Part shown: piece after piece, positions 2,153 to 26,800 of the stretch
Numbering within the stretch: the stretch's first letter is position 1
How the letters are laid out: each line of letters starts with the position of its first letter
Origin: Epithemia pelagica
Taxonomy: Eukaryota > Protista > Bacillariophyta
DNA: 64,000 nt
NCBI GenBank assembly: GCA_946965045.2
Contig: OX337238.1
Location: 930,001-994,000, forward strand
Reading direction: 5' to 3'
The notes under the pieces: generated by a model
Database searches by the model: none
What the model was told of the DNA's origin: nothing
Seen by the model: the letters and a program-made list of their open reading frames with translations, nothing else
Translations under genes and position numbers: made by a program

Positions 2153-3329
2153 ATGACATTGCAAGTGCAAGCATCTCAGTCAGGCCTTGTCTTTTCCGAC
2201 AGTGGCAACAACAACAGCCAGGTACCAGCAGGATGGAAGATTAATGACTGGCCTTCTCTATTGGGTGGATGGCGTTGTGGACATGCGTCGGTTGTGGTAG
2301 ATCCTCCTTAACTCAAGGACCACAGCCACGAGGCACAGACGGTCGTTCTCCTGGGAGGACATAATCCAAGTCAAGGCCCTATGAATTCTGTTCTGGTATT
2401 GAATTTGTCAGACGAACACAAACAGTGGCGCGCAGGACCAACCATGAACAGCAACAGAGGCTCTCCTGCAGCTGTGGTGTGCAACCGAGGAGTGTACGTC
2501 ATGGGAGGAAACAATGGATTTTTCAGGCTTGGACAGCATCGAACGGATGGATGTTCAAGACTTGTTGCAAACAACGTTATCGACGAACAACAACACTACT
2601 ACTTCAGGGCATTGGACGACGTTGAATTGTCGATTGTCTACTATACGAAATGGATGTTCAGCAGTTGCTGTTCACGATCGATACATTGTAGTCATGGGTG
2701 GACACAATATGGATGAACACGATGGAAGCTTTGTGTCGTCCGTCGATATGATCGATACGGCCACACGAAACAACAACCATACAGTCATTTCCGGACCATC
2801 CATGACGATTGCTCGTGGATATTTTGCAAGTGCTGTCGTTGGTCATTGCATCTATGTTGTTGGAGGCCCCGATATGCTTTCGGATGAGCTCACCTCGGTG
2901 GAGGTTTCGGAGTTTCAGGATCCTTTGGAGACCACAGAGACTGCAGTAGCAGTAGGACAAGTCTTTCCCTCCTCGTGTGCTTGGACAACTCACATGGATC
3001 TCAAGCTTTCGGACCCACAGATGGACCAGCATGCCGTTGTAGCTCTGGGATCCTGTCTGTTGGTTACTTCCGCCAACGCGCAAGCCTCTGTTCAAGTCAT
3101 GGATACATCTCGTAAGCAGCATGTGTGGAACCTGCCACTGTTCCAACAGGAACGGTTTGGCTGCACTGAAGTGGCATTTTCGAATGGCATTGCCATGATT
3201 AGCGGATTACAAGTTGATTCTTGTGAGACACTCTCTTTGATGGACAAGAACACATGGTGTTTTCGTCGACTGTTGGAGATGGTGTCCAACGGACGCGGTA
3301 TCGAATGCAAACACATGTATATCAAATAA
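2153..3329 (+). pseudogene. Kelch-repeat protein pseudogene
   Basis: GG-containing Kelch blades homologous to the genes at 15080 and 41135 (LLGGWRCGHASVVV, LDSIER, WTTLNCRLS). In-frame TAA at 2309-2311 and a +1 frameshift near 2531 (AGG CTT G GAC AGC ATC GAA). Confidence 0.85.
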
Positions 3330-3700: not shown

Positions 3701-4208
3701 ACACATGGGAAACGTCCTAGCGCTTGTGGATAGTTGGGTTTGATATTGGTGCGTCGCCCGCGTCTCTTTCTCCTTTGTTCATCTTCGTCGGTAGCTCAAA
3801 CAAGATTATATTGTGAGCTACTCCAACTGCAGGTTGAGGTACTCGTGGATCGGATTCGGATTCGTAGAACTGGTAGCCTCTATTCGAAACTGAGGAGTCG
3901 CGTAAGAGACGCAGACAGAACAAATGAAAATTGTCCCGACCGCGGAGTTTTTCATTCCATGTTCCGTGTTCCGTGTCGTAATCCGTAATCCCGTGCCTGT
4001 ATGGTTTTTATTATAGTGTAGAAGATATACACACATCAAATTGAAGAACCCAACCTTATATTATTGCCCATTCCACCAGATTAGTATAGCCCATCCAATA
4101 TTTGCGTCATCACCAATCACGCTACGAAAACAAAACGAAGCAAGATCACATTCACATCTCACATCGAGGCTTCGGTACCGAGGGAATTACGAAATACCTC
4201 CATGGGAG

Positions 4209-7200
4209 ATGGGATCTCTGGAATGGATTTCACTTGATGGAATCGCTCAATGTGGGGATGGAACTACAGCGAGTCTGTATCAGGATTGGTCAATTTTGGA
4301 AGAGAGGAATCGGCCATCGCCACACAGCTATCTGCTTGTTTTTCTTGGTGGCGGTGCCTGCAGCACCGAAGAAGAATGCAATGAAGTATGGAAAAGTGAT
4401 CCATTCCGACTGTCGTCCAACTACGCTCCAAACCGAATTACTGGGCAAACCATCCTATCGAACGATCTGAGCATCAACCCTTCCATGTACCAGTTCGGCA
4501 AAATTGCAACGTATTACTGTTCTCAAGATCTATATCTCGGATCTGGCGTTATGGAAAGTGGACTTATACGTGACGGAGAACGGCATTTTCAAGGAGTACT
4601 TGACTATTTTGTTCGACAACTTCAAGTACAATCTGAACCATCGACTGTCGCGCAACTAGTTGTTGTTGGTCAGTCGGCCGGTGGCATTGGGGTATTAAAT
4701 CATTTGGACCAGATTCGTCAAGTGGCAGCAACGGTAGGGGCTCAAGAGCTCAAGGTCATTGCCGATTCTTCATTGATCAGCGACCAGTACTCCTTGCCTC
4801 GGAATCCCCATTTCTTGGACTACGCCATTCACCCCCTCTGTAATCAGACTTGGAATTTCATGCACAAAGACTTGACATCACTTCCATGTTGTGCATCGAC
4901 GCATTGTCTGAGTCGACAGGGCATCTTTCTTCCTGCATCACCTCAAGAACAGACAGTGGAAGAATCGTTTCTTTTGTTAGATTCGACACACGATGCCATA
5001 GCTCTTTTGGAAGCAATGAAAGAATACAGGTCTACCAGTGGTGCAAGCATCAGCGATCATCTGGAACGATACAGTGCGGTAGGGGAGATTGCGGGATCTC
5101 GCATTCGAGCGACGGAAGAAACTGTTTTATGGGATCTCTTGGGCAATCCAGATTCGTGTGCTTCTTCTTCCTCTTTTCGAAGCATGACAACGGAAACTGT
5201 CCAGCCGGATGTTCTACCGCAATTGGCTTGGGAAATGCCTTCCTGTCTGATTCATGGGTTCATATTCCCCTCATTGGAACTCCAACATCTGAGTTGTATG
5301 GATTACGGAAATGACAAAATGCTGGACGGAGTAGGTCACTCCGAGCACCTGCGAGAGGTTTGTCGAGAAAGTGGTGCCGGTCGAACGGGTACTGTGGGAG
5401 ACCTAGGCATGACACTGTGGTTCGACATTGATACTTGGGAACGTGCGTCTGTGAATGGAACGTCCATCAAGGACACTATTGAAACATTTATTTCCGGAGG
5501 TGGCGTTCCCTCAATCCTAGGTGGCGACAGTGGTGAAACTGTGGGTGTGTTGCTAGACGATTGTGCCGGTCCCAACTGCGTTGTGGACAATATACAGCAT
5601 GCCTGTCAGTCCCTTTTGGAACTGGAGAACACGTACCATGAAGTCAACCAAGCACTGAGAATAATCTGGTTCATATATATTGGGTTAATAGTGCTTCTGG
5701 GCATTTTACTTCAGACCAACTGGGAAGGTTCCTTCGTGTCCAGACTGCTTGGTTCCTGGTCTACCACGGCATCGCGGTTTATCCAAGCAGTGTTTCTGGG
5801 TCAGCCGAAAGATAAAAAGTCTGTCGTGACGGGGGTTCGAATGGCTAATTTGTCCGTTAAGCTCAAGTCAACCGGTCGAACGCTTGTCAAGAATGTTACC
5901 ATCGATCTCAAACCAGGAAGTGTGAACGGGCTCTTGGGACGATCTGGTTCTGGAAAATCGACATTGGTATGTCCCTTTCCGCCAAGAGTATGAAAATGAC
6001 GATGTCGGTTCCATTCCCCTTACTTCACGACGTTCGCTGTGCTTTCCTTGTCTTTTTGTTTCTTTTCATTTCACGTAACACAGTTGGGGGCCATCAGTGG
6101 GCAAACAAGTACCGGTGTTGAACTTGATTCCGAAAGTGATATCAAACTGAACATTGATGGAACCACGTACCTCCGTCAGCACGATCTTGTGACCATGGAG
6201 AATTTGACACCATCACTATACCTTGAAACATGCTCCGCACTATACGGTGCGGATCCGGCACAGTTGGAGCAAGTTCAACGGTTTGTTCAGCCATTCTTTC
6301 CCAGGGAGGAGGCAGACATCGAAGACGAGGAGGACTATGACGGAACCGAAACGACTGAGTTCAGCGTCCCCCGTGATCCATCGACCCGCCATAGTCCGAA
6401 TGGTCCTCAGTCAGTGAAGATGAAGGACGAAGAGGAACAAGGATCATCATCTCTAACGTTTGAAAAGAGCTTGTTCTTTGATGAGGATCCAACAGAGGCT
6501 GCTGGCCTTTCTAGTGGGGTACGTGCCTCGACTTTGACTGGGGGAAATAAGGATCAAAAGAAAAGTACAATGCCTACCCATGGACCATTTGAGAACAGCA
6601 AAATAATAAATTGCAGTGGAGGGCAAAGGCGCGTCTTAGCTGTGGCTGCAGCACTCTTGACGGACCCGTCAGTTTTATTGCTCGATGAGGTAAGTCCATT
6701 GTGTTCCTTGACACATTGTCGTCGCAATCTCCTCTCAATCCTTCTTTGACTACAGCCCCTTTCCGGTTTGGACAGTGTCGCGTGTGAGCAGCTGATGGAA
6801 TTGCTGCAAATGGTAGCAAATGAGCAGGAAAGAACAATCTTGGTGACTCTTCATCAACCATCTGATACGATTCTTGGGTACCTCCACGAAGTAGTGGTGC
6901 TGAAACAGGGTAAAGTCGTACTGGATGAGAACATGGAAGTGATACAAAATGCTCTCGCAATCAATGGAAACAATCGGTTGGGGTCCTCAGAATTGATCCA
7001 CCGAGTTGTGAAGTACGGAAAGGTATCAAGATCTATAGATGACTGCATTGCCCATTGTAGAGAGGAACGGGAGGCTTCAACACATTCCTTGGCCCTTCCT
7101 CGTGAGTGCATGACTCCGCTAAAAGACAAGCGACACCCACTCGCTCAAGTCATGGCCTTGGGGCGGAGACTTCGACTCAACTATGGCTTCAATTACGCCG

Positions 7201-8033
7201 ATTTGGTCGCCTTGCCTGTCTGTTTTTCCATTTTGGCCTTTTCCCTCAACTTTGATCCTGATGCGCCCACAACTATCTTTATGGGATGCATGGTCATGTT
7301 CTTCATTCCCATTGTATTGTTTCAGCACCATCTGCATCTCAGCTGGGACATTTGGCGGACGCATCGATGGGAACTAGATGATCGCCGAATCTCCATTGCC
7401 TCTTTCCAAATCGCATCTGTTGCCTTTTCCCTTGCTATGCCACTCCTCGCCATTGCCGGCTCTCTAGCCATGGTGTACAGCATATTGGGCTGGGATTGGG
7501 CCTCGTATCCCAATCAGGCTCTCTTCGGTTTGGTCTTTTTGATTGTCATTATCAAGTTCGGTCGCACCTTGATTTTACTCCGCAATGGGAACTATACTAC
7601 TTTCATGAGGATCTACTTGTTGTGTATTTTCCTCTTTGTGGTATTTGGTGGACTCGTGAGTACACCAAATCAAGCTCCGGAGAGTTTGCGGTGGCTCTTT
7701 GGGCTTTCTTTTGCATTTTGGGCCTTTTCGGGCATTTTAACATCGCAATTCGAACACAATGGTCAAATTGGTGAGGAGCCCTGCATGAGCTTTGCCTCTT
7801 GTGTGGTGTCGGATGGCAATTTTTTGGCCGCACAGTCTGGATTTTGGCCCTTTTCCAACACGCGTCGTGCCTTGAATGTCTTGTCGTCGTTGTATGTGGT
7901 CTTTTTGGTATCAGAGTATATGTTGCTACGATATTGCCGTGCGCAATTTCTCGATCCGAGCAGTGTCCAAAAACTGGATAAGCGAAGAACTGCAACTCGG
8001 AAACAGAGTCAACTATCTTTTCCGAGAGTATGA
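4209..8033 (+). CDS. Pectin-acetylesterase/Notum-family carboxylesterase fused to a half-size ABCG transporter (about 1213 aa, 3 exons)
   Basis: Exons 4209-5966, 6084-6689, 6756-8033; both introns are GT-AG, phase 0. Esterase: QCGDGT, FLGGGAC, YCSQD, GQSAGG (Ser), LDSTHD (Asp), PSCLIH (His). Then TM LRIIWFIYIGLIVLLGILL. NBD: GRSGSGKST, CSGGQRR, VLLLDEPLSGLD, TLHQP. Then a hydrophobic ABC2-type TMD. The start codon is uncertain because the frame is open back to 4041. Confidence 0.85.
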
Positions 8034-10410
8034 AAACGTAAACTCGAAGCCCACGTAACTTGATGGAGTGGTTTGATCATTATCTTTGAGGTACTTGGGG
8101 TGCCTCTACTTGGCCGTTCGGTCGTGTGGAATCCAGACAATAATGCCCGTCTTGTTGTTGATAGGAGATGGGAGGATATTTTCTTCTCCTCGTGACTTCC
8201 CTTTCCCTGCCGTAAGTCAAAGGAAGGAAGAGCCAAAAACGATAGATGCGTCCCTTTGCCTTAACCCAGCTTTGCACCATCTCCATTCTCCATCTCCAAT
8301 AGCAAATCCGAGAAAGCGAAGAAATTCGATGCGATCGTGATGGATCGTGGAGTTTAACACGTACTCGGAACTCGGAAGCTCTAAAATCTCAGGCTTAACT
8401 AAAATCTTATCTCTCTTTCTTAAGTAGTCTCGAATCAACTTTTTTAAATATAGTGGGCTTATATATGGAGGCTATTGGCGTTGGCGAGCTCATCTAAAGC
8501 CCCTCGCCAGTCGCTCTTTCAGTTTTCGTTTCGGAGAACAGCCTAAGTAGCCACTTCTTACTACTTCTTTGATTTGGACGATTTTTCAGTGAGGCAACTC
8601 TTCGAAAACAACATACTCTCGTAGTATCCGAACAAAATACAACGGTGAGTAAAACTACGTAGCTCCTGGTACATTCCTACCATACTTTAGACCTCATAGT
8701 AGGTTGGCATCCACAAGACGATACCTTTGCTACCTATCTTTCTTTTCCTATGTGGTCCAACCTCCAACACGTCTAAGTACTCCTAGAGGAATATGGCTGG
8801 CATTTGCAGATGGCCGTAAGAAATGAACTTACAACGTGGGATTATCATTGAGTGTGATTCAAACAGCAATCAAACAAGAATGGGACGACAAACTTGGCTA
8901 GAATAGACCTGGCTAGTGGCAAAGAAGAATAGACCCAACGAAAAGACATCCTATTAGCGCAGTGGACCATACACACACAAAACAAGAAATGCTGGTTCTA
9001 TGACACTGCCTTGCGACAATCAAAACAATTCTAGCTCTAAACAAGGCGTATCATTGTACGAGGACCAACTCAAGCACTACCACCACCAGGAGCATCCCAA
9101 CTGGAGGGAGCCCGGTGCCACCGAGGGAAGAGGCCCATTCCAGGATGCACCACAAGTGGGACAATGACTGGCATCCAATAGAGTGGCATCTTGTTGAAAA
9201 ATAATTGAGGAGCTGTTGGATGGAGTTGTATTCGTGGTGGTGGTACTTGTCGTCGTGGCCATGCTTATTGGCAAACGCAAGAGACTCCACAAATGGCGAC
9301 AATGGGCCATGCTTGGAAGGTTCTTGTTTGGTCAGCCGTTATAGGCGTGAATGACAACATGGAAGACAACATGTTGTTGTTGTGGTTGGTGTTGGGTGTG
9401 TTGTTGTATGTCGATGTGGAAAAAATCTCGTGCAGGTCCCTTCTTAAAATAGAGAATGAATTAGATATAGCTACTAGAAAGCACATATAACACAATGTAT
9501 GTCACTACTGCTTTTGTGCTTACTGTTGCTCCATACTTGCGAAAAGAAGGCCTCTGTTTTGTCTTTTAATCGTTGATTGTTGTGTGCTAACGTGCCAAAC
9601 CAAGCTGTTTTGGAGTGGTAAGCTATCTTAAGCTGCACTTCTCCCACCACATCCACCACTTCATATCGCTTTTAATACTGCTGAAGGAGAATAGGAAGCA
9701 GTATCAGGGCGTGAGAAAGTGTAATGGACAAGAAGGAGCAAAAACGGAGCAGCACAGTCAACATTGAAGAAAAGCCACGTAGCATCTCAGATGAACGACT
9801 TCATCTCTACCAATCCTTCGATTTTCCCCACGAAACTTAAAAATCGTGTATATTGCATACATTTTGCGACACGCACAAAGCTTCGACCTCTATCAGTGTC
9901 CTCGTCTGATGAACGGTGGTATCCAAAGCGGAGCGTCATGGCGAGGTTGTGATTTTATTATCTAGCTTAACCATGCAGTACGTGAAATGAAAAATGTGAG
10001 AAAAGTTGTATTTCAGTCATGAAGTACACTTACTTTCATAGTGCAGAGTTGTATTTTTGGTATGGGTTTGCGCAACTGAGAGGGCAACTTTTAGTTGTAC
10101 GGCATACTCTCGCAACTATAAGCTAGAGGCACACTATGAAGTACGAAGACATACTCCTGATGGGACTGACTGGACTGATGCATACTCCTGCATCCACTAT
10201 AATACTACGCGATTCGAGACCCAGTCAAGAAGAATACTACTGCAGTTGTATTTTTGCGTTATTCGAAATATATATAGGAGTATTATGATTACAAAAGTTT
10301 GCTACCTGTGTATGTTACGAATGCGAGGTTCACAAGATTGAAGATTGGTCACAGACGAGAAAGACGATCAAGGTCCCTCACATATTTCATACTCCTTGGT
10401 TCTTTTTCTA

Positions 10411-13400
10411 ATGGCTTTGGATTGGAGTTTGTTACCTGGTGTAGCCCAGTGTGGCGATGGAACACCAGTCGGCGTTTACCAAGACGGGGATTGGTTCAGA
10501 GGCGATTCACCACGGGAACACTCGGTTTTGCCTTCTGCTACTAAAACGGAAACAACGTCAAAGCAAACGTATGAAAGAAACTATCTCCTTGTTTTCCTTG
10601 GTTCCGGCGCCTGTATCACACAAGATTAATGCAAAGACACTCTAACAAACAAGCCACATTCAGTTTCGTCTAACCATGTTCCCACACAAATTCGCGGCGA
10701 CGCCATTTTGTCCAATGATCCGCAAATCAATCCAACCCTCGACCAGCATATCAAACTTGCCACCTATTACTGCTCACAAGACTTTTATCTGGGATCAGGT
10801 GTTCGCGTCAATGGCATTCTCCGAGATGGCGATGCCTACTTTCAAGGTGTCCTGGATTACTTTGTCAAACAACACGAAGAATGGCTCTCTGTTTCACAAC
10901 AAGACGAAGAACCAGAAATGGGACAGTTGGTAGTGGCGGGCATTTCCGATGCAGGAAGTCTCGGAGTGTTGAATCATTTGAATGCCATTTGACAAGTGGC
11001 CGCGACTCTTGGTGCACGAGAACTAAAAATCATGGTCGATTCGTCCTTACTCAGCGACGACCATGACGTTGCCTCCCTGACTGATGAGGTTGGATTGATT
11101 GTGGACACCGATCGACACCCCCTTTGCGACACGGCCGCTTTTTCCATGCACGAGTCGTTGACGTCCCTCCCATGTTGCTTGTCCACACACTGTCTTGCTC
11201 GCCATGGAAGCTTCCTCCCCCCTTCACCACCACCAACATCACAGCCAATTGCTGTTCCGGACGAATCCTTTCTCTTGCTCGATTCCACCTATAATGCAGT
11301 AGCAATCCTCGTGTCTTTGGATACCTACCGAAACAAGGGTATTAGTGCGATAAGTGCACAGGCAGAGCAATACAGTGCGGTTGGGGAAATTACCGGGTCT
11401 CGAATTCGAGCAACACAAGAAACCATGTACTGGGACCTTTTGGGTACTCGCTATTCTCCTTCTTCCACAACAGTCTACCCAACCGCAACCAATAGCTCAC
11501 AAGACAGCTCACAAGAATGGCCTAAGTTGGCCTGGGTTATGCCATCATGTTTGACTCATAGTTTCATTCTGCCATCATTGGAGCTTGAACATCTCGAATG
11601 TCAGCAATATACCTCATCAGGTGATATACAATATGATGACGAGGAACACAAACAGTACCATAACATGGAAGTTTGTCGAGACACGGGTGTCGGCATGACT
11701 GGCAAAATCGGTGATTTGGGCGTGACCTTGTGGTTGGATATCAACACCTGGAACTATGCCTCAGTGAATGGTACATCGGTAAAGGACACTGTTGGTCGCT
11801 TTGTATCTTCGAATGGCGTCTCCGCACTGCTTCCCGACAACGAATCTGTAGGACTATTGATGGATGACTGTGCAGGTCCCAATTGTGTCACTGATAACCA
11901 ACCACATGCCTGTCAACCTCTCTTGGAACTCGAGAATACTTATCATGAAGTCAATTTTTCCTTGAGAGCGATATGGTTTTGATATTTGGGATTCATTGTG
12001 CTGTTGGGTATCTTGCTTCGGACGACCTGGGGAGGCATTCTAGTTTCCAAACTATTACGGCCTTTGGCATCTTCGGCAAAGGTGGTCCGAAGCAGGACAA
12101 AGCAAATGACATCCAGTTGTTACGCCAAAGAGACACCCACTGTAGAACATTTACCAGGTGTGAGAATGACAGACTTGACTGTCAGGCTCAAGTCGTCTGG
12201 GAGAACCATCTTGGATAAAGTGAAACTCGATTTGAAACCAGGGACGGTCAATGGGATTGTTGGAAGATCAGGATCGGGAAAGTCCACGGTGGTAAGTGTT
12301 CTGCTGAGAAGCGGACTAGTAGACGACCATTCCAGTTTCTGTGGGTGACTCATGTGTGTTGTCGTTGCTACATTGCTTTGGTCCAGCTTGGTGCTATTAG
12401 CGGACAATCAAGTCCTGGCATTGTCCTGGACCCCGATTGCGATATTAAAATCAACATTGACGGAACGACATATCTGCGACAGCATGACTTGGTGGCCTTG
12501 GACAATTTGACACCGGCCTTGTATTTGGAAACATGCGCCGCCATTTACGGTGCGAACCAAACGTAGCTCGCGGAGGTTCAAAACTTTGTTCGTCCCTTCT
12601 TTCGGACCAAAAAGAGCGATTCGTGGAGTATCGTAGATAAGGATGATCATGGCATCCTCCGACAACAAGAGAATGATGAAACTTTGTCGTCGACAATTTC
12701 TGCGGCGCAAGCGTCATCAAATGTGACAGCGGAAAAGGATCAGGGCGATGGAATGGACGCTGAATGTGGGGATGCAATGCCTCCAATGGAACTGAAACGG
12801 AGGATTCTTCGGACAGTTTCGGGTGCCACAGAACCTACAGCACAGTTTTCCGAAACCAGTGTTTTACCATCGTCACAACGTGACACCTCAACAAAGCAGA
12901 ATGGAGTGGAATCGATGACGACGATAGATTCCTGCCAGACGAATCATGAACCATTTGAAACAAATAAAATTACCATGTGTAGCGGAGGACAGCGCCGTGT
13001 GTTGGCGGTAGCAGCAGCATTGTTGACAAATCCCTCCGTCATGCTTCTGGATGAGGTACGTTGTTTTTGTACTTTTTACTGTGATAAACTCGGAACCACA
13101 TCATCTCATTGTTTCGCTGTAGCCTCTTTCTGGTTTGGACAGTGTCGCATGCGAGCAACTCATGGAGTTATTGCATATTGTTGGTAAACGGCGAGATTGC
13201 ACCATCTTGGTCACCTTACATCAACCCTCGGATGCTATTCTAGGGTATCTAAACAAGATTGTTGTAATGATGCAAGGCGAAGTGGTCTTTGATGAATACA
13301 CAGAGGTAGTCCAATCTGCGTTGGCCATGGATAAATACCGTACAAGAAGACTTTCTGAGTTTGTCCATGGTGTCGTGAAAGATGGCATTGTATCCCAAAC

Positions 13401-14382
13401 CATGGAGTTACATCTCATTCAGTCTCGAGAACAATGGAGCGGTGCCACGGCGCTTGGTGACGACGAAACATCAAAGGGGACATCGACGATGGCTATTCCC
13501 ACGGAACACGAGAAGCGTCATCCTCTGGCCCAAGTTATGCCATTGGGACGTCGGTTTCGACTCAATTATGGATTCAACTATGCCGATCTTGTCACCTTGC
13601 CTGTGTGTTTTTCCATTTTGGCCTTTTCCTTGGGCTTTGATGCAGACGCGCCCGTCAATATCTATATGGGATGTGTTGTCATGTTCCTTGTCCCCATTCT
13701 CCTTTTTCAGCATCATTTGCATTTGAGCTGGGACATGTGGCGGACGCATCGTTGGGAATTGGACGATCGTCGAATCTTTGTGTCGTCCTTCCAAATTGCC
13801 TCTGTGGCCTTTTCCCTGTCCATGCCTCTCATTGCGACTGTGAGTTCCCTGGCTTTGGTCTATGCCATTTTGGGATGGGATTGGGCCTCCTTTCCCAATC
13901 AGACCTTGTTTGGTGTTTTGTTTCTCGTCGTGATTATGACCTTTGGTCGAAGTTTGATTCTGGCCTGTAATGGGAATTACACCATTTTCATGAGGGTCTA
14001 TCTGATTTGTATCTTTTTATTTGTTGTATTTGGTGGCTTCATGAGCACTCCCGATCAAGCTCCTGAAAGTGCGAAATGGTTGTTTGGTTTGTCCTTTGCC
14101 TTTTGGGGCTTTTCGGCCATTGTGACTTCCCAATTTGAACACAATGGTCGAATTGGGGAACAGGATGCCTGTTTGAGCTTTGCTTCCTGTGTGGTGTTTG
14201 ATGGAAACTTTTTGTCGGCCCAATCGGGCTTTTGGCCCTTTTCCAACACGGACCGAGCCCTCAAGGTTTTGTCGTGTATTTATGTCACGTTTTTGACTCT
14301 GGAATATGTGCTATTGCGATACCGTCGAGCGCAATTCCTGGACCCGAGTAGCTTGAAACAGTTGGACAAGCAACCAAAGTAG
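10411..14382 (+). pseudogene. Second esterase-ABCG fusion copy, carrying four in-frame stop codons
   Basis: Collinear with 4209-8033 and with the same intron positions (12292-12386, 13056-13122). In-frame stops at 10627-10629 (TAA), 10990-10992 (TGA), 11980-11982 (TGA) and 12564-12566 (TAG), with no frameshift. The nucleophile motif is altered to GISDAGS. Confidence 0.85.
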
Positions 14383-23866: not shown

Positions 23867-26800
23867 CTATACAAACTTGTCCTTTCCATCTTCAACGGTT
23901 GGAGACTCTGCTTGTTGGACCAAATCCCGGAGTGCTCTAGCACTTTCCGGCCCAGTCGCATCAACAAGGTCAGCAAACATTCCTTCTGCCTGCAACAGAT
24001 CTGCAGGCCTTCCAATTTCAGCCGCATGTCCATCGGCCATTACAAGGACCAAGTCATAATCCATGATTGTATGTAGTCGGTGTGCAATTGTGAGCAGCGT
24101 TGTGTTTTGAAAACGTGTTCTCAGCATGTGTTGGATGAACGCATCGGTTTCTCCTGTTTGGTGCAAGGAAAAGATCCCGAATGTGAGCAATGTGTACGGT
24201 GACAAAACCTCACAACCCAACCCAACCGTGTCGTTACGTACCATCTACACTTGCTGTAGCTTCGTCAAGTACCAAAACCTTCGGCTTGCTGAGAAGGGCT
24301 CGTGCAAGATTCAACAACTGACGTTCACCGACACTAAAGTTGGATCCTCCTTCTTCGACCGTCATTTGAAGAATTTCAGAAGAGTCGGACGGCTGGGCCA
24401 TTCGTACTGCTCTCAATGCCTCCAGTACATCTTCATCACTGCTTTGTCCAAATGGGTCGATGCATTCCCTTAGAATCGTCCCTGTAAGGAAAGGATCTTG
24501 TGGAATAATAGCCATGCCATTTGTGCGTCCTCGAACATCCGAAAGACCCAGTTGCCCAAGATCTGTTCCATCGAGAAGAATACGACCTGACTCAATCTCA
24601 ACTAAGCGGAAAATAGCAACCTGCGCGTCGTAACGATGAGATGAAATAATCGTTAGTCGAACGTATCAACCAAGCTCTAGCGAGCGTCGAATGTGCCTTA
24701 CCGTCAAAGAACTTTTGCCTGCGCCTGTCCTTCCAACGACTCCACAGGACTTTCCAGCAGGTACGGAGAACGTGAGATTGTTTAACGCAAGAGGTAAACC
24801 TTCACGATATCTGAGACAAACATTCTCAAAGACAATTTGTCCATGTTCCGGCCACTCTGGGGCAGGAAGGAAGCGTTCTTCGGTTTTCATTGCTTTTTCG
24901 GCGGGAATTTCAGTCATGGCGTCCACACGTTCAATTGCCGTAATGGCGGATTCGGCTTCTCCAAAGAAATCAATCAGAAAACCCAAGGAGACGGTAAAGT
25001 TGGACGACCAAATAATGAGGAGCCCAACCAACCCTGGTTCAATGCGAAGAACATCGTTCAAACAGACCACCAGAGTAGTTGAAACCAGAACCACCGTGGC
25101 ACCCAAGCTTTCGATGCGCACTCCCAACCATCTTTGAGCAGTGACATAGTTTAACAGTGCGGCACTGTTGGTATCTGCGGCCTCGCGAAACCGGTCCAAG
25201 AAGGTCTGTTCCCTGTTGAAGACTCTTATGGATGCAGCACCATCCAACACTGCGAAAGAAGTGAGGAATTGGTCACAACAATAAGCACGCAAAGAACTCA
25301 TTCGACGTACCCTCCGTGACCATTGCTTGTACCGGTGACCGTGACATTGCATCCAAACGTTGAAGATCGACGCCGGATCTTCGATAGTGCAAAAGAATCA
25401 TAAGGTAGATGGTCGTGACTGGAAACAAACAGAGCAGCATCCATGGAAGAATGGAGCTCATCACTATAATCCCTGCGAAAAACCAGCTTAGCGCAATAAG
25501 CAAAATCGACATGGCTTCTGTTAAAACAATATCCACGACTTCAATGTCATATGTAAAACGATTGAGGACCCGCCCCATGGGCGTTGTTTCAAAATACGAT
25601 AAAGGAGCCTTCAACACACTTTCCTAAAACAACAAGAACAAATGTCAGATATCACACGCAATCACCACGAATCCTTTCGCATATGTAGACCTACCAACAT
25701 CGCCGAAAAGACTTTTTTGGCAGCTCGAGATCCTCCGGTGACAGCCCAGCTTGATCTCAAGTTTGTGGCAATCACTGACAGAACAATCAGGACCGAAAGC
25801 ACTTTGAGGTATTCATATTGCGCCGAGAACCCATCCGTTTGGGGTGCATAGGTTTTACCAAAAACATCAACCGGTTCTTCAGCACCGCTCGTCCATCGAG
25901 CAATCCAATACTCGACGGCGACGTAAAGAAAACGATCCAAAATGAGACACACAAGGATAATGGACAAAAAATAGGCACCACCGGCATATTTGAACCATAA
26001 CAACCAGGTTTTCAGATTGGAAAGTCCATATTCGCGTTGCTCTACCGTCATGATCTCGTGCATTCGTTTCGACCCTCCTCTCTTTTCGTCGTTGCCCCCT
26101 TGACTGGGGAGTCCATCTTGTCCCTCCATTTCGGTATCCTCTTGAACCGATGCTCTCATGTGGTCTACAGCAATTTTGGTTTTCAGGTCGTCCTCCTCCG
26201 GTTCAAACTGACCCAGTTCACTCCAGGACCCCAAGAATTTGTTTTTGCCATCCACAATCACGAGAATTCGGTCCACCATGTTCAAAAAGTGCGACGAATG
26301 AGTTACCAGCACCACAGCGCTGTTGGCAAAAAGCGCCTGTTTTCCACGAATCAATCGATCAAACACTAATTTTGACGTTGTGGCATCCAAGGCCGACAAG
26401 GGATCGTCGCACAACACGACATCGGGACATGAATAGGCGGCTCGCGCCAAGGACACGCGTTGCTTTTGACCTACACAGAGTATAGTTAGTAGTAGCACAG
26501 TGACATTGCAGGCGTGAGATCACAACCGTATCAGCTGGTTGCACCTGTACATGCATACTCACCTCCCGACAGAGTCACTCCTCGTTCTCCAATTTGGGTC
26601 AGATCCTGGGCGGCTCCCAATTGTTCGACATCGGATCGGAGACAACAGGCATCGAGGACTCGTTCGTATCGATCTTGATCAAAGTCGAGACCAAACAAGA
26701 TATTTTCACGAAAGGTGGTATTGAGAATAAAGGGTGTTTGTGGTACATAGGCAATGGTTCCCTGAAATTGGACCCTCGTTTGGTCCGACAGGGGTGCCAC

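What the first reader, a model, noticed from the sequence alone, without database searches (positions are those of the whole stretch)
4209..8033. Pectin-acetylesterase/Notum hydrolase fused in one polypeptide to an ABCG half-transporter
Seen: one spliced frame joins a complete esterase (GGG oxyanion loop, GQSAG serine, Asp, PSCLxH histidine), a TM helix, an intact ABCG NBD and a TMD. The same architecture recurs in the neighbouring copy, so it is not a chance read-through. Established: PAE/Notum enzymes remove O-acetyl or O-acyl groups extracellularly; ABCG half-transporters dimerise and export lipids or wall precursors; N-terminal ectodomains occur in ABCGs such as yeast Adp1. I do not know of a described catalytic esterase ectodomain on an ABCG. 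Inference: a coupled export-and-deacylate (or deacylate-and-import) machine for acylated glycans or lipids at the cell surface, for example mucilage or adhesive. No clear signal peptide follows the chosen ATG, so the true N-terminus is unresolved.
Basis: partly seen in the sequence, partly recalled or inferred. Interest (0 to 1): 0.78.

Follow-up and report, generated by a model that had tools for sequence, protein, structure and literature searches.

The report
Esterase-headed ABCG transporter gene, diatom
This is a real, intact and transcribed diatom gene that joins a Notum/pectin-acetylesterase-type enzyme to an ABCG membrane pump in one protein; it belongs to a widespread family I found no paper on, and its neighbouring copy is a broken pseudogene.

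Summary
Window 4209-8033 (+) is a three-exon gene (4209-5966, 6084-6689, 6756-8033; 1,213 codons, no stops).

- **One reading frame:** the esterase, the extra TM helix and the Walker A motif all lie in one uninterrupted ORF, so the fusion needs no splicing.
- **Transcription:** a metatranscriptome contig shows intron 1 spliced exactly as predicted.
- **Head domain:** PAE/Notum fold, with Ser156, Asp186 and His349 conserved across the family.
- **Tail domain:** a divergent but clear ABCG NBD plus TMD, with every ABC motif intact.
the neighbouring copy (10411-14382) is collinear but has four in-frame stops and a disrupted nucleophile elbow. It is a pseudogene.
- **Family:** at least 25 sequence clusters share the PAE-TM-ABC architecture. 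They include Seminavis, Fragilariopsis, Amphora, Skeletonema, MMETSP transcripts and a Lithocolla transcript. One genomic homologue is a single intronless 1,108-codon ORF.
- **Topology:** most homologues carry signal peptides, which argues the esterase is extracytosolic. This copy and its closest relatives show none, so its N-terminus stays unresolved.
- **Literature:** six searches found no paper on the fusion. Databases hold members under generic names.
- **Earlier notes:** the scan had already noted this family on other pieces of the same genome, where the checked pair was broken. This window's copy 1 is the only lesion-free copy I saw.

Coupling of export to deacylation is inference only.

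The parts
4209..5966 (+). Copy 1 exon 1 (586 codons): esterase ectodomain, TM0, linker and the NBD up to Walker A, all in one ORF
   Evidence: Pfam PAE 1.2e-21. Notum by sequence 5e-10, by family profile 1.8e-34 and by fold.
4347..4355 (+). GGG oxyanion-loop motif
   Evidence: GG-G.C is conserved across the family.
4668..4682 (+). GQSAG nucleophile elbow (Ser156 at 4674-4676)
   Evidence: Aligned to Notum GSSAG. The Ser is invariant in 31 family members.
4764..4766 (+). Catalytic Asp186 (ADS motif)
   Evidence: Aligned to Notum ADSG. Invariant in the family.
5253..5255 (+). Catalytic His349 (PSCLIH motif)
   Evidence: Conserved in at least 90% of the family. Residue-level alignment to the Notum His was not obtained.
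5661..5723 (+). TM0, an extra membrane helix between the esterase and the NBD (IIWFIYIGLIVLLGILLQTNW)
   Evidence: Helix 481-502 in the model. Basic residues follow it on the NBD side.
5937..5963 (+). Walker A (GRSGSGKST)
5967..6083 (+). Intron 1 (GTATGT..ACACAG, 117 nt)
   Evidence: Metatranscriptome contig X1 record 2 joins 5965/5966 to 6083/6084 with no mismatches.
6084..6689 (+). Copy 1 exon 2: NBD core with Q-loop 6165-6185, a long acidic insert, signature CSGGQ 6612-6626 and Walker B 6672-6689
6690..6755 (+). Intron 2 (GTAAGT..CTACAG, 66 nt), predicted
   Evidence: Splice consensus and the continuity LLLDE|PLSGLDS. The same position is used in copy 2. No RNA contig crosses it.
6756..8033 (+). 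Copy 1 exon 3: D-loop, H-loop (TLHQPS 6846-6863), ABCG transmembrane domain, stop TGA 8031-8033
   Evidence: Family profile against PDB: ABCG1 over its full length, E 8e-20, and all top hits are ABCG/PDR. The Foldseek top 50 are all ABCG. Best NCBIfam hit is TIGR00955.
10411..12291 (+). Copy 2 exon 1 (pseudogene): in-frame stops TAA 10627-10629, TGA 10990-10992, TGA 11980-11982; GSG replaces GGG; GISDAG replaces GISAG
12387..13055 (+). Copy 2 exon 2 (pseudogene): in-frame TAG 12564-12566
13123..14382 (+). Copy 2 exon 3: an open ABCG TMD reading frame, 68% identical to copy 1

Best explanation
What it is. Window 4209-8033 encodes one 1,213-residue membrane protein of a diatom. From the N-terminus it has a disulfide-rich Notum/pectin-acetylesterase-fold serine hydrolase (Ser156-Asp186-His349), one extra transmembrane helix (TM0), an ABCG-type nucleotide-binding domain and an ABCG-type six-helix membrane domain. 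It belongs to a eukaryotic family, mainly diatoms, with this same architecture.

Likely working. TM0 puts the esterase on the extracytosolic face, either the cell surface or the lumen of a secretory or vacuolar compartment, while the NBD stays cytosolic. Two chains pair as in other ABCG half-transporters. ATP hydrolysis moves an O-acylated amphipathic cargo out of the cytosolic leaflet. The tethered esterase, sitting over the exit, then removes the acyl group. Alternatively it works on acyl esters in the immediate surroundings.

Shown: the architecture, intact motifs, both folds, splicing of intron 1, and family breadth.

Inferred: the topology of this particular copy, dimerisation, coupling of the two activities, and the substrate.

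The neighbouring copy (10411-14382) is a pseudogene.
For: - One ORF spans esterase, TM0 and Walker A.
- The three exons have no stops and canonical splice sites.
- An RNA contig splices intron 1 exactly. RNA contigs also lie on the esterase (4968-5227) and on the 3' end (7880-8014).
- PAE is above the Pfam cut-off. Notum is the best match by sequence and by fold (TMt 0.65-0.71; model pLDDT 78, pTM 0.78).
- Ser and Asp are invariant, and His is conserved in at least 90% of 31 members, together with 7 invariant cysteines.
- The C-terminal part is of ABCG type, and every ABC motif is conserved.
- At least 16 full-length representatives at 50% clustering align across the whole of exon 1. More distant ones have the same Pfam architecture.
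- Named members come from Seminavis, Fragilariopsis, Amphora and Skeletonema. There are complete MMETSP transcripts and a complete Lithocolla transcript.
- One genomic homologue is an intronless 1,108-codon ORF.
- Most homologues have signal peptides. TM0 is followed by basic residues. Some relatives add a PHM/DBH-like copper monooxygenase, a secretory-pathway enzyme type, in front of the esterase.
Against: - This copy, its three paralogues and the intronless homologue P0006 show no signal peptide. A crude scan found no upstream signal-peptide exon. How about 480 residues would cross the membrane is therefore unexplained here.
- No single RNA contig bridges the esterase and the NBD in this species, and intron 2 lacks RNA support.
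- The four other copies seen in this genome carry lesions, so selection on the family may be relaxed in this species.
- ABC2_membrane is below the Pfam cut-off for this copy (21.1 against 26.9), and TIGR00955 is far below its cut-off.
- Nothing here bears on substrate or coupling. The catalytic His was not aligned residue by residue to Notum.
Confidence: 0.55

Rival explanations
1. Co-localisation without coupling. The esterase de-acetylates extracellular or luminal polymers (EPS, wall or frustule glycans), as plant pectin acetylesterases do. The ABCG part serves only as a membrane anchor, or exports an unrelated cargo.
For: The Pfam family is PAE/CE13, whose plant members act on polysaccharides (established knowledge). 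The ectodomain is rich in disulfides and sequons, like secreted wall enzymes.
Against: A full, motif-perfect ATPase and TMD is conserved together with the esterase across 25-35% identity. That is costly for a mere anchor. Some relatives stack a second small-molecule-type enzyme, a PHM/DBH-like monooxygenase, on the same ectodomain.
Confidence: 0.22
2. In this SP-less subclade the esterase stays on the cytosolic side, or the protein has another topology. It would then trim the cargo before export (deacylate, then pump).
For: No signal peptide is visible in copy 1, copy 2, L001, L002 or the intronless P0006.
Against: TM0 is a strong 21-residue hydrophobic helix lying between the esterase and an NBD that must be cytosolic. 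The invariant cysteines and the signal peptides of most relatives point to an oxidising compartment.
Confidence: 0.1
3. Copy 1 is itself on the way to decay or is functionless in this species, like its paralogues. The intact frame would only reflect a recent loss of constraint.
For: Copy 2 has four stops. L001 has a frameshift. L002 lacks the catalytic His and has a fragmentary TMD. An earlier follow-up in this genome called another pair broken.
Against: There are 1,213 codons without a lesion. All catalytic and ABC motifs are intact. The gene is transcribed and correctly spliced in an environmental sample.
Confidence: 0.1
4. Gene-model artefact: two adjacent genes (a secreted esterase and an ABCG) wrongly joined.
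For: No RNA contig in this species spans 5228-5924.
Against: There is no stop, start context or intergenic space between them. One ORF runs from the esterase through TM0 into Walker A. An NBD starting at exon 2 would lack Walker A. Complete fused transcripts and an intronless fused ORF exist elsewhere.
Confidence: 0.03

Closest known systems
Notum (palmitoleoyl-protein carboxylesterase) and plant pectin acetylesterases (Pfam PF03283, CAZy CE13)
   Same: Alpha/beta-hydrolase fold. GxSxG serine, DS aspartate and SCxxH histidine. The C-terminal D-x-C-x-x-P-x-C cysteine motif. Extracellular and disulfide-rich.
   Different: Known members are soluble secreted enzymes. Here the domain has large insertions, is only 16-18% identical to Notum, and is tethered through a TM helix to an ABC transporter. 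The substrate class, acetylated glycan or fatty-acylated molecule, is unknown.
ABCG half-transporters (ABCG1, ABCG2, ABCG5/8, AtABCG25/16; White/EPP family TC 3.A.1.204)
   Same: NBD-then-TMD order, HQPS H-loop, and ABC2-type membrane domain. The family profile aligns to the whole ABCG1 C-terminal half, and the fold search returns only ABCG/PDR proteins.
   Different: Highly divergent: 14-17% identity, and below the Pfam and TIGRFAM cut-offs for this copy. It has an extra N-terminal TM helix and a catalytic ectodomain. Copy 1 also has a 60-80-residue acidic insert in the NBD.
Yeast Adp1 (ABCG with an N-terminal EGF-like ectodomain and an extra TM helix); from my own knowledge, not tested here
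   Same: The overall plan: ectodomain, TM helix, NBD, ABCG TMD.
   Different: The Adp1 ectodomain is a non-catalytic EGF-like module. Here it is a hydrolase with a conserved triad. No EGF domains were found.
Peptidase-containing ABC transporters (PCATs: bacteriocin exporters with a C39 peptidase domain); from my own knowledge
   Same: The principle of an enzyme fused to an ABC exporter that processes its cargo.
   Different: The peptidase is cytosolic and acts before transport. The ABC fold class differs, and the systems are bacterial. Here the enzyme would act on the far (trans) side.

Membership tests
PAE/Notum esterases (PF03283, CE13) | Significant match to the family profile above the curated cut-off | tested here: met
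   PAE 77.7 bits against a cut-off of 26.6, E 1.2e-21, covering profile positions 22-202 of 355. The family profile against Notum gives E 1.8e-34.
PAE/Notum esterases (PF03283, CE13) | Alpha/beta-hydrolase fold like Notum | tested here: met
   AlphaFold model pLDDT 78.4, pTM 0.78. The Foldseek top 50 are all Notum, E about 1e-14, TM about 0.7 normalised on Notum.
PAE/Notum esterases (PF03283, CE13) | Ser-Asp-His catalytic triad | tested here: met
   Ser156 and Asp186 align to the Notum GSSAG and ADSG motifs. Ser and Asp are invariant and His349 is conserved in at least 90% of 31 family members. The His was not aligned residue by residue to Notum.
PAE/Notum esterases (PF03283, CE13) | Esterase activity on O-acetyl or O-acyl substrates | not testable with these tools
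   Needs an enzyme assay with an S156A control.
ABCG half-transporters | Reverse domain order (NBD before TMD) with a complete set of ABC motifs | tested here: met
   Walker A, Q-loop, CSGGQ, Walker B, D-loop and the HQPS H-loop are present in order and conserved in the family.
ABCG half-transporters | ABC2-type (type V) membrane domain | tested here: met
   Pfam ABC2_membrane is sub-threshold for this copy (21.1 against 26.9) but above it in homologues. The family profile matches ABCG1 residues 245-675, E 8e-20. The Foldseek top 50 are all ABCG/PDR.
ABCG half-transporters | Score above the curated cut-off of the White/EPP subfamily model TIGR00955 | tested here: not met
   It is the best NCBIfam hit, but scores 57.8 bits (exon 3) and 106-112 bits (full-length homologues) against a cut-off of 736. 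This is a divergent ABCG-like clade, not a White/EPP orthologue.
ABCG half-transporters | Functional homo- or heterodimer | not testable with these tools
   No multimer prediction of the joined protein was run (the joined step was left out).
Adp1-like ABCG with ectodomain | Extra TM helix between an N-terminal extracytosolic domain and the NBD | tested here: met
   TM0 at 5661-5723, present in all family members.
Adp1-like ABCG with ectodomain | EGF-like repeats in the ectodomain | tested here: not met
   No EGF family appears in any Pfam scan. The ectodomain is PAE.

The most novel reading that the evidence does not exclude
A previously undescribed class of eukaryotic ABC exporter carries its own catalytic ectodomain and processes its cargo on the far side of the membrane. 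The cargo would be exported in an acyl-protected form and de-protected at the exit. Some relatives add a copper monooxygenase module, which would make a membrane-bound export-and-tailoring assembly line.
Probability: 0.3. Interest if true: 0.8.

Novelty: new variant of a known kind. Interest (0 to 1): 0.55.

Why it matters
ABC exporters with a catalytic domain on the trans side of the membrane are, to my knowledge, not described. If the esterase acts on what the pump delivers, this would be a new way of coupling transport to chemical activation or maturation at a cell surface or inside a vesicle.

The family sits in diatoms, which are major primary producers, so its cargo could bear on exuded lipids, signalling molecules or surface polymers. 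It is large and conserved enough to test: it occurs in culturable diatoms such as Seminavis, Fragilariopsis, Skeletonema and Amphora. This window holds the only lesion-free copy I saw in this genome, next to a dated example of its decay.

Tried and rejected
- **Alternative genetic code for copy 2's stops:** rejected. All three stop types occur, and copy 1 has none in 1,213 codons.
- **RIP-like mutation:** not fitting. One of the four nonsense changes needs a transversion and another needs two changes.
- **Upstream signal-peptide exon:** a crude scan (ATG, a hydrophobic stretch, a GT donor and an in-frame YAG acceptor within 1.2 kb) found nothing for copy 1, L001 or L002, and only one weak candidate for copy 2.
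- **ESM Atlas feature search with exon 1:** no usable hit.
- **Word-index search with the 650-aa ORF:** only 7 hits, because of the length filter.
- **Literature:** six full-text searches found nothing on the fusion. They combined PAE, pectinacetylesterase, esterase domain, ABCG, diatom and Adp1. The two papers I opened were irrelevant.
- **Variants in RNA/DNA contigs:** 5 synonymous and 6 non-synonymous, too few to say anything about selection.
- **Repeat between the copies:** no second copy lies inside the window.
Full report
**1. What is in the sequence**

The window is eukaryotic, with short GT..AG introns and about 48% GC. On the + strand a single ORF (4041-5993) runs from the ATG at 4209 through an esterase domain and a 21-residue hydrophobic helix (5661-5723). 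It continues through a linker into an ABC Walker A motif (GRSGSGKST, 5937-5963) and ends at a GTATGT donor at 5967. Joining the esterase to the transporter therefore needs no splicing.

Exon 2 (6084-6689) carries the Q-loop, a long acidic insert, the signature CSGGQ and Walker B (VLLLDE). Exon 3 (6756-8033) starts with the D-loop (PLSGLDS) and the ABCG-typical H-loop (TLHQPS), and continues into the membrane domain. The three exons give 586+202+425 codons with no stop.

I never built the joined protein.

**2. Transcription**

Only one RNA run held part of the stretch, a metatranscriptome coded X1.

- One of its contigs joins 5965/5966 to 6083/6084 with no mismatches. This is exactly the predicted intron 1.
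- Other contigs lie on the esterase (4968-5227) and on the 3' end (7880-8014).
- No contig bridges 5228-5924, and none crosses intron 2.

Both halves are thus expressed in the same sample and intron 1 is confirmed. A single full-length mRNA in this species is not directly shown.

**3. The head domain**

- Pfam PAE matches at 77.7 bits (cut-off 26.6) over the N-terminal half of the profile.
- The best solved relatives are Notum. The query's GQSAG aligns to Notum's GSSAG, and its ADS to Notum's ADSG.
- A profile of 31 family members hits Notum at E 1.8e-34. It also weakly picks up the shared C-terminal D-x-C-x-x-P-x-C motif.
- An AlphaFold model built from that alignment (pLDDT 78.4, pTM 0.78) returns only Notum structures as its top 50 fold matches, with TM about 0.7 on Notum.
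- In the family alignment Ser156 and Asp186 are invariant, His349 is conserved in at least 90%, and seven cysteines are invariant.

**4. The tail**

For this copy alone Pfam ABC2_membrane is below threshold (21.1 against 26.9). Three other results settle the type:

- A profile of 17 family C-termini matches ABCG1 over residues 245-675 (E 8e-20). The next 26 hits are all ABCG or PDR proteins.
- The AlphaFold model of exon 3 (pLDDT 81) returns only ABCG2, ABCG1, ABCG25, ABCG16, ABCG5/8 and Pdr5.
- The best NCBIfam model is TIGR00955 (White/EPP), but far below its cut-off.

This is a divergent ABCG-type half-transporter, not an orthologue of a known ABCG. All ABC motifs are conserved across the family.

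**5. The neighbouring copy**

Copy 2 (10411-12291, 12387-13055, 13123-14382) is collinear with copy 1 and has introns at the same two positions. Amino-acid identity is 52%, 44% and 68% for the three exons.

It has four in-frame stops where copy 1 has sense codons:

| Stop | Coordinates | Residue in copy 1 |
|---|---|---|
| TAA | 10627-10629 | Glu |
| TGA | 10990-10992 | Arg |
| TGA | 11980-11982 | Ile |
| TAG | 12564-12566 | Gln |

It also has GSG in place of GGG, and a one-residue insertion in the nucleophile elbow: GISDAG against the family's GISAG. There are no frameshifts.

The divergence is old, so this copy was probably functional for a long time and died recently.

**6. Other copies in the same genome**

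The window's ORF, P0002 and P0004 all come from one ENA assembly.

- The L001 copy is complete apart from a 1-nt frameshift in an A5 run, which could be real or a homopolymer error.
- The L002 copy lacks the catalytic His and has a fragmentary membrane domain. It sits head to head with another esterase fragment, beside a LINE-like element.

The scan's earlier notes on other pieces of this genome describe the same family. A follow-up called one head-to-head pair broken but still transcribed, which agrees with what I saw in L002. Copy 1 of this window is the only lesion-free copy I met.

**7. The family**

An exhaustive HMMER search with exon 1 found 679 representatives. At least 16 of them, 1,010-1,554 aa long, align from the start of the esterase to Walker A at 30-35% identity.

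- **Architecture:** Pfam shows PAE + ABC_tran (+ ABC2_membrane) in all those tested. The same holds for more distant hits: P0080, P0112, P0131, P0143, P0057, P0064, P0082 and P0202.
- **Named members:** at least four full-length Seminavis robusta proteins (annotated 'ATP-binding protein', 'transporter G family member', 'Lantibiotic transport ATP-binding protein SrtF'). Also Fragilariopsis cylindrus OEU07413.1 ('hypothetical protein'), Amphora coffeiformis, Skeletonema marinoi and S. dohrnii.
- **Transcripts:** complete MMETSP transcripts, and a complete transcript from the nucleariid amoeba Lithocolla globosa.
- **Intronless homologue:** P0006 is a single 1,108-codon ORF on a genomic contig of another assembly.

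The fusion is therefore a genuine, widespread architecture.

**8. Topology**

Most homologues start with a clear signal peptide directly before the first strand of the esterase. TM0 is followed by basic residues (net about +3, against about 0 before it). The ectodomain has 15 cysteines and two N-glycosylation sequons.

Two relatives place a PHM/DBH-like copper monooxygenase in front of the esterase. By established knowledge, that is a luminal, secretory-pathway type of enzyme. All of this puts the esterase outside the cytosol and the NBD inside.

However, copy 1, copy 2, L001, L002 and the intronless P0006 all begin right at the mature domain (M-x-LDW... or MSFVFNYL...) with no signal peptide. 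A crude exon scan found none upstream. In other members (P0152, P0016) a Met at this position is internal, downstream of a signal peptide, so the ATG at 4209 need not be the start. The N-terminus of this subclade remains unexplained.

**9. How it probably works**

I commit to the following model. The chain is inserted with the esterase extracytosolic and pairs into an ABCG dimer. It uses ATP to expel an O-acylated amphipathic cargo, and the tethered esterase removes the acyl group at or near the exit.

The conserved co-occurrence of a fully competent ATPase/TMD with a fully competent triad at 25-35% identity argues that both activities matter. The monooxygenase-bearing relatives hint at tailoring of small molecules rather than polymers.

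Coupling, substrate, compartment and dimerisation are all inference. The main rival is an anchored polysaccharide de-acetylase with no coupling to transport.

**10. Novelty**

Six full-text searches and two opened papers gave no description of a PAE/Notum-ABCG fusion. Public databases hold members only under generic automatic names. I class the gene as a new variant of a known kind: an ABCG half-transporter with an ectodomain, as in yeast Adp1 (my own knowledge), but with a catalytic one.

The family is widespread but, as far as I could find, uncharacterised.

Noticed in passing
Proteins P0023 and P0200 (relatives, not in the window): Two family members of about 1,550-1,570 aa carry a PHM/DBH-like copper monooxygenase (Cu2_monooxygen + Cu2_monoox_C) in front of the PAE-TM-ABCG unit. 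That puts two enzyme modules on one transporter.
   Followed up: partly
L004:3001-6327 (assembly ERZ26692762): Homologue P0006 is a single intronless 1,108-codon ORF holding the whole esterase-ABCG fusion. It also lacks a signal peptide or any in-frame upstream ATG.
   Followed up: yes
L001:10001-14278 (same assembly as the window, contig ctg1340l): A further paralogue is complete except for a 1-nt frameshift in an A5 run near L001:11425. This may be a real lesion or a homopolymer assembly error.
   Followed up: partly
L002:8070-14438 (same assembly, contig ctg1330l): A head-to-head pair of esterase-ABCG remnants lies next to a LINE-like element (RVT_1 + Exo_endo_phos). The forward copy has Asn in place of the catalytic His, and its membrane domain is fragmentary.
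   Followed up: partly
window 8525-9500: The spacer between the two copies has 4- to 20-fold higher contig depth in the DNA runs than the flanks, with many variant contigs. It looks like a repeat present elsewhere in the genome. No second copy lies in this window.
   Followed up: partly
window 2514-3329 (+): The upstream neighbour is a Kelch-repeat protein ORF of 271 aa.
   Followed up: no
window 6300-6560 (+): Copy 1 has an acidic, low-complexity insert of about 60-80 residues between the Q-loop and the ABC signature. Most homologues lack it, and copy 2 has a different, even longer one.
   Followed up: no
window 7935: A T>C variant (Cys>Arg at codon 394 of exon 3) appears in part of the DNA contigs and in two other runs. 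Copy 2 has Arg at this position.
   Followed up: no
window 24261-24341 (-): A short match to the ABC signature/Walker B region lies on the minus strand. It is probably an unrelated ABC gene.
   Followed up: no
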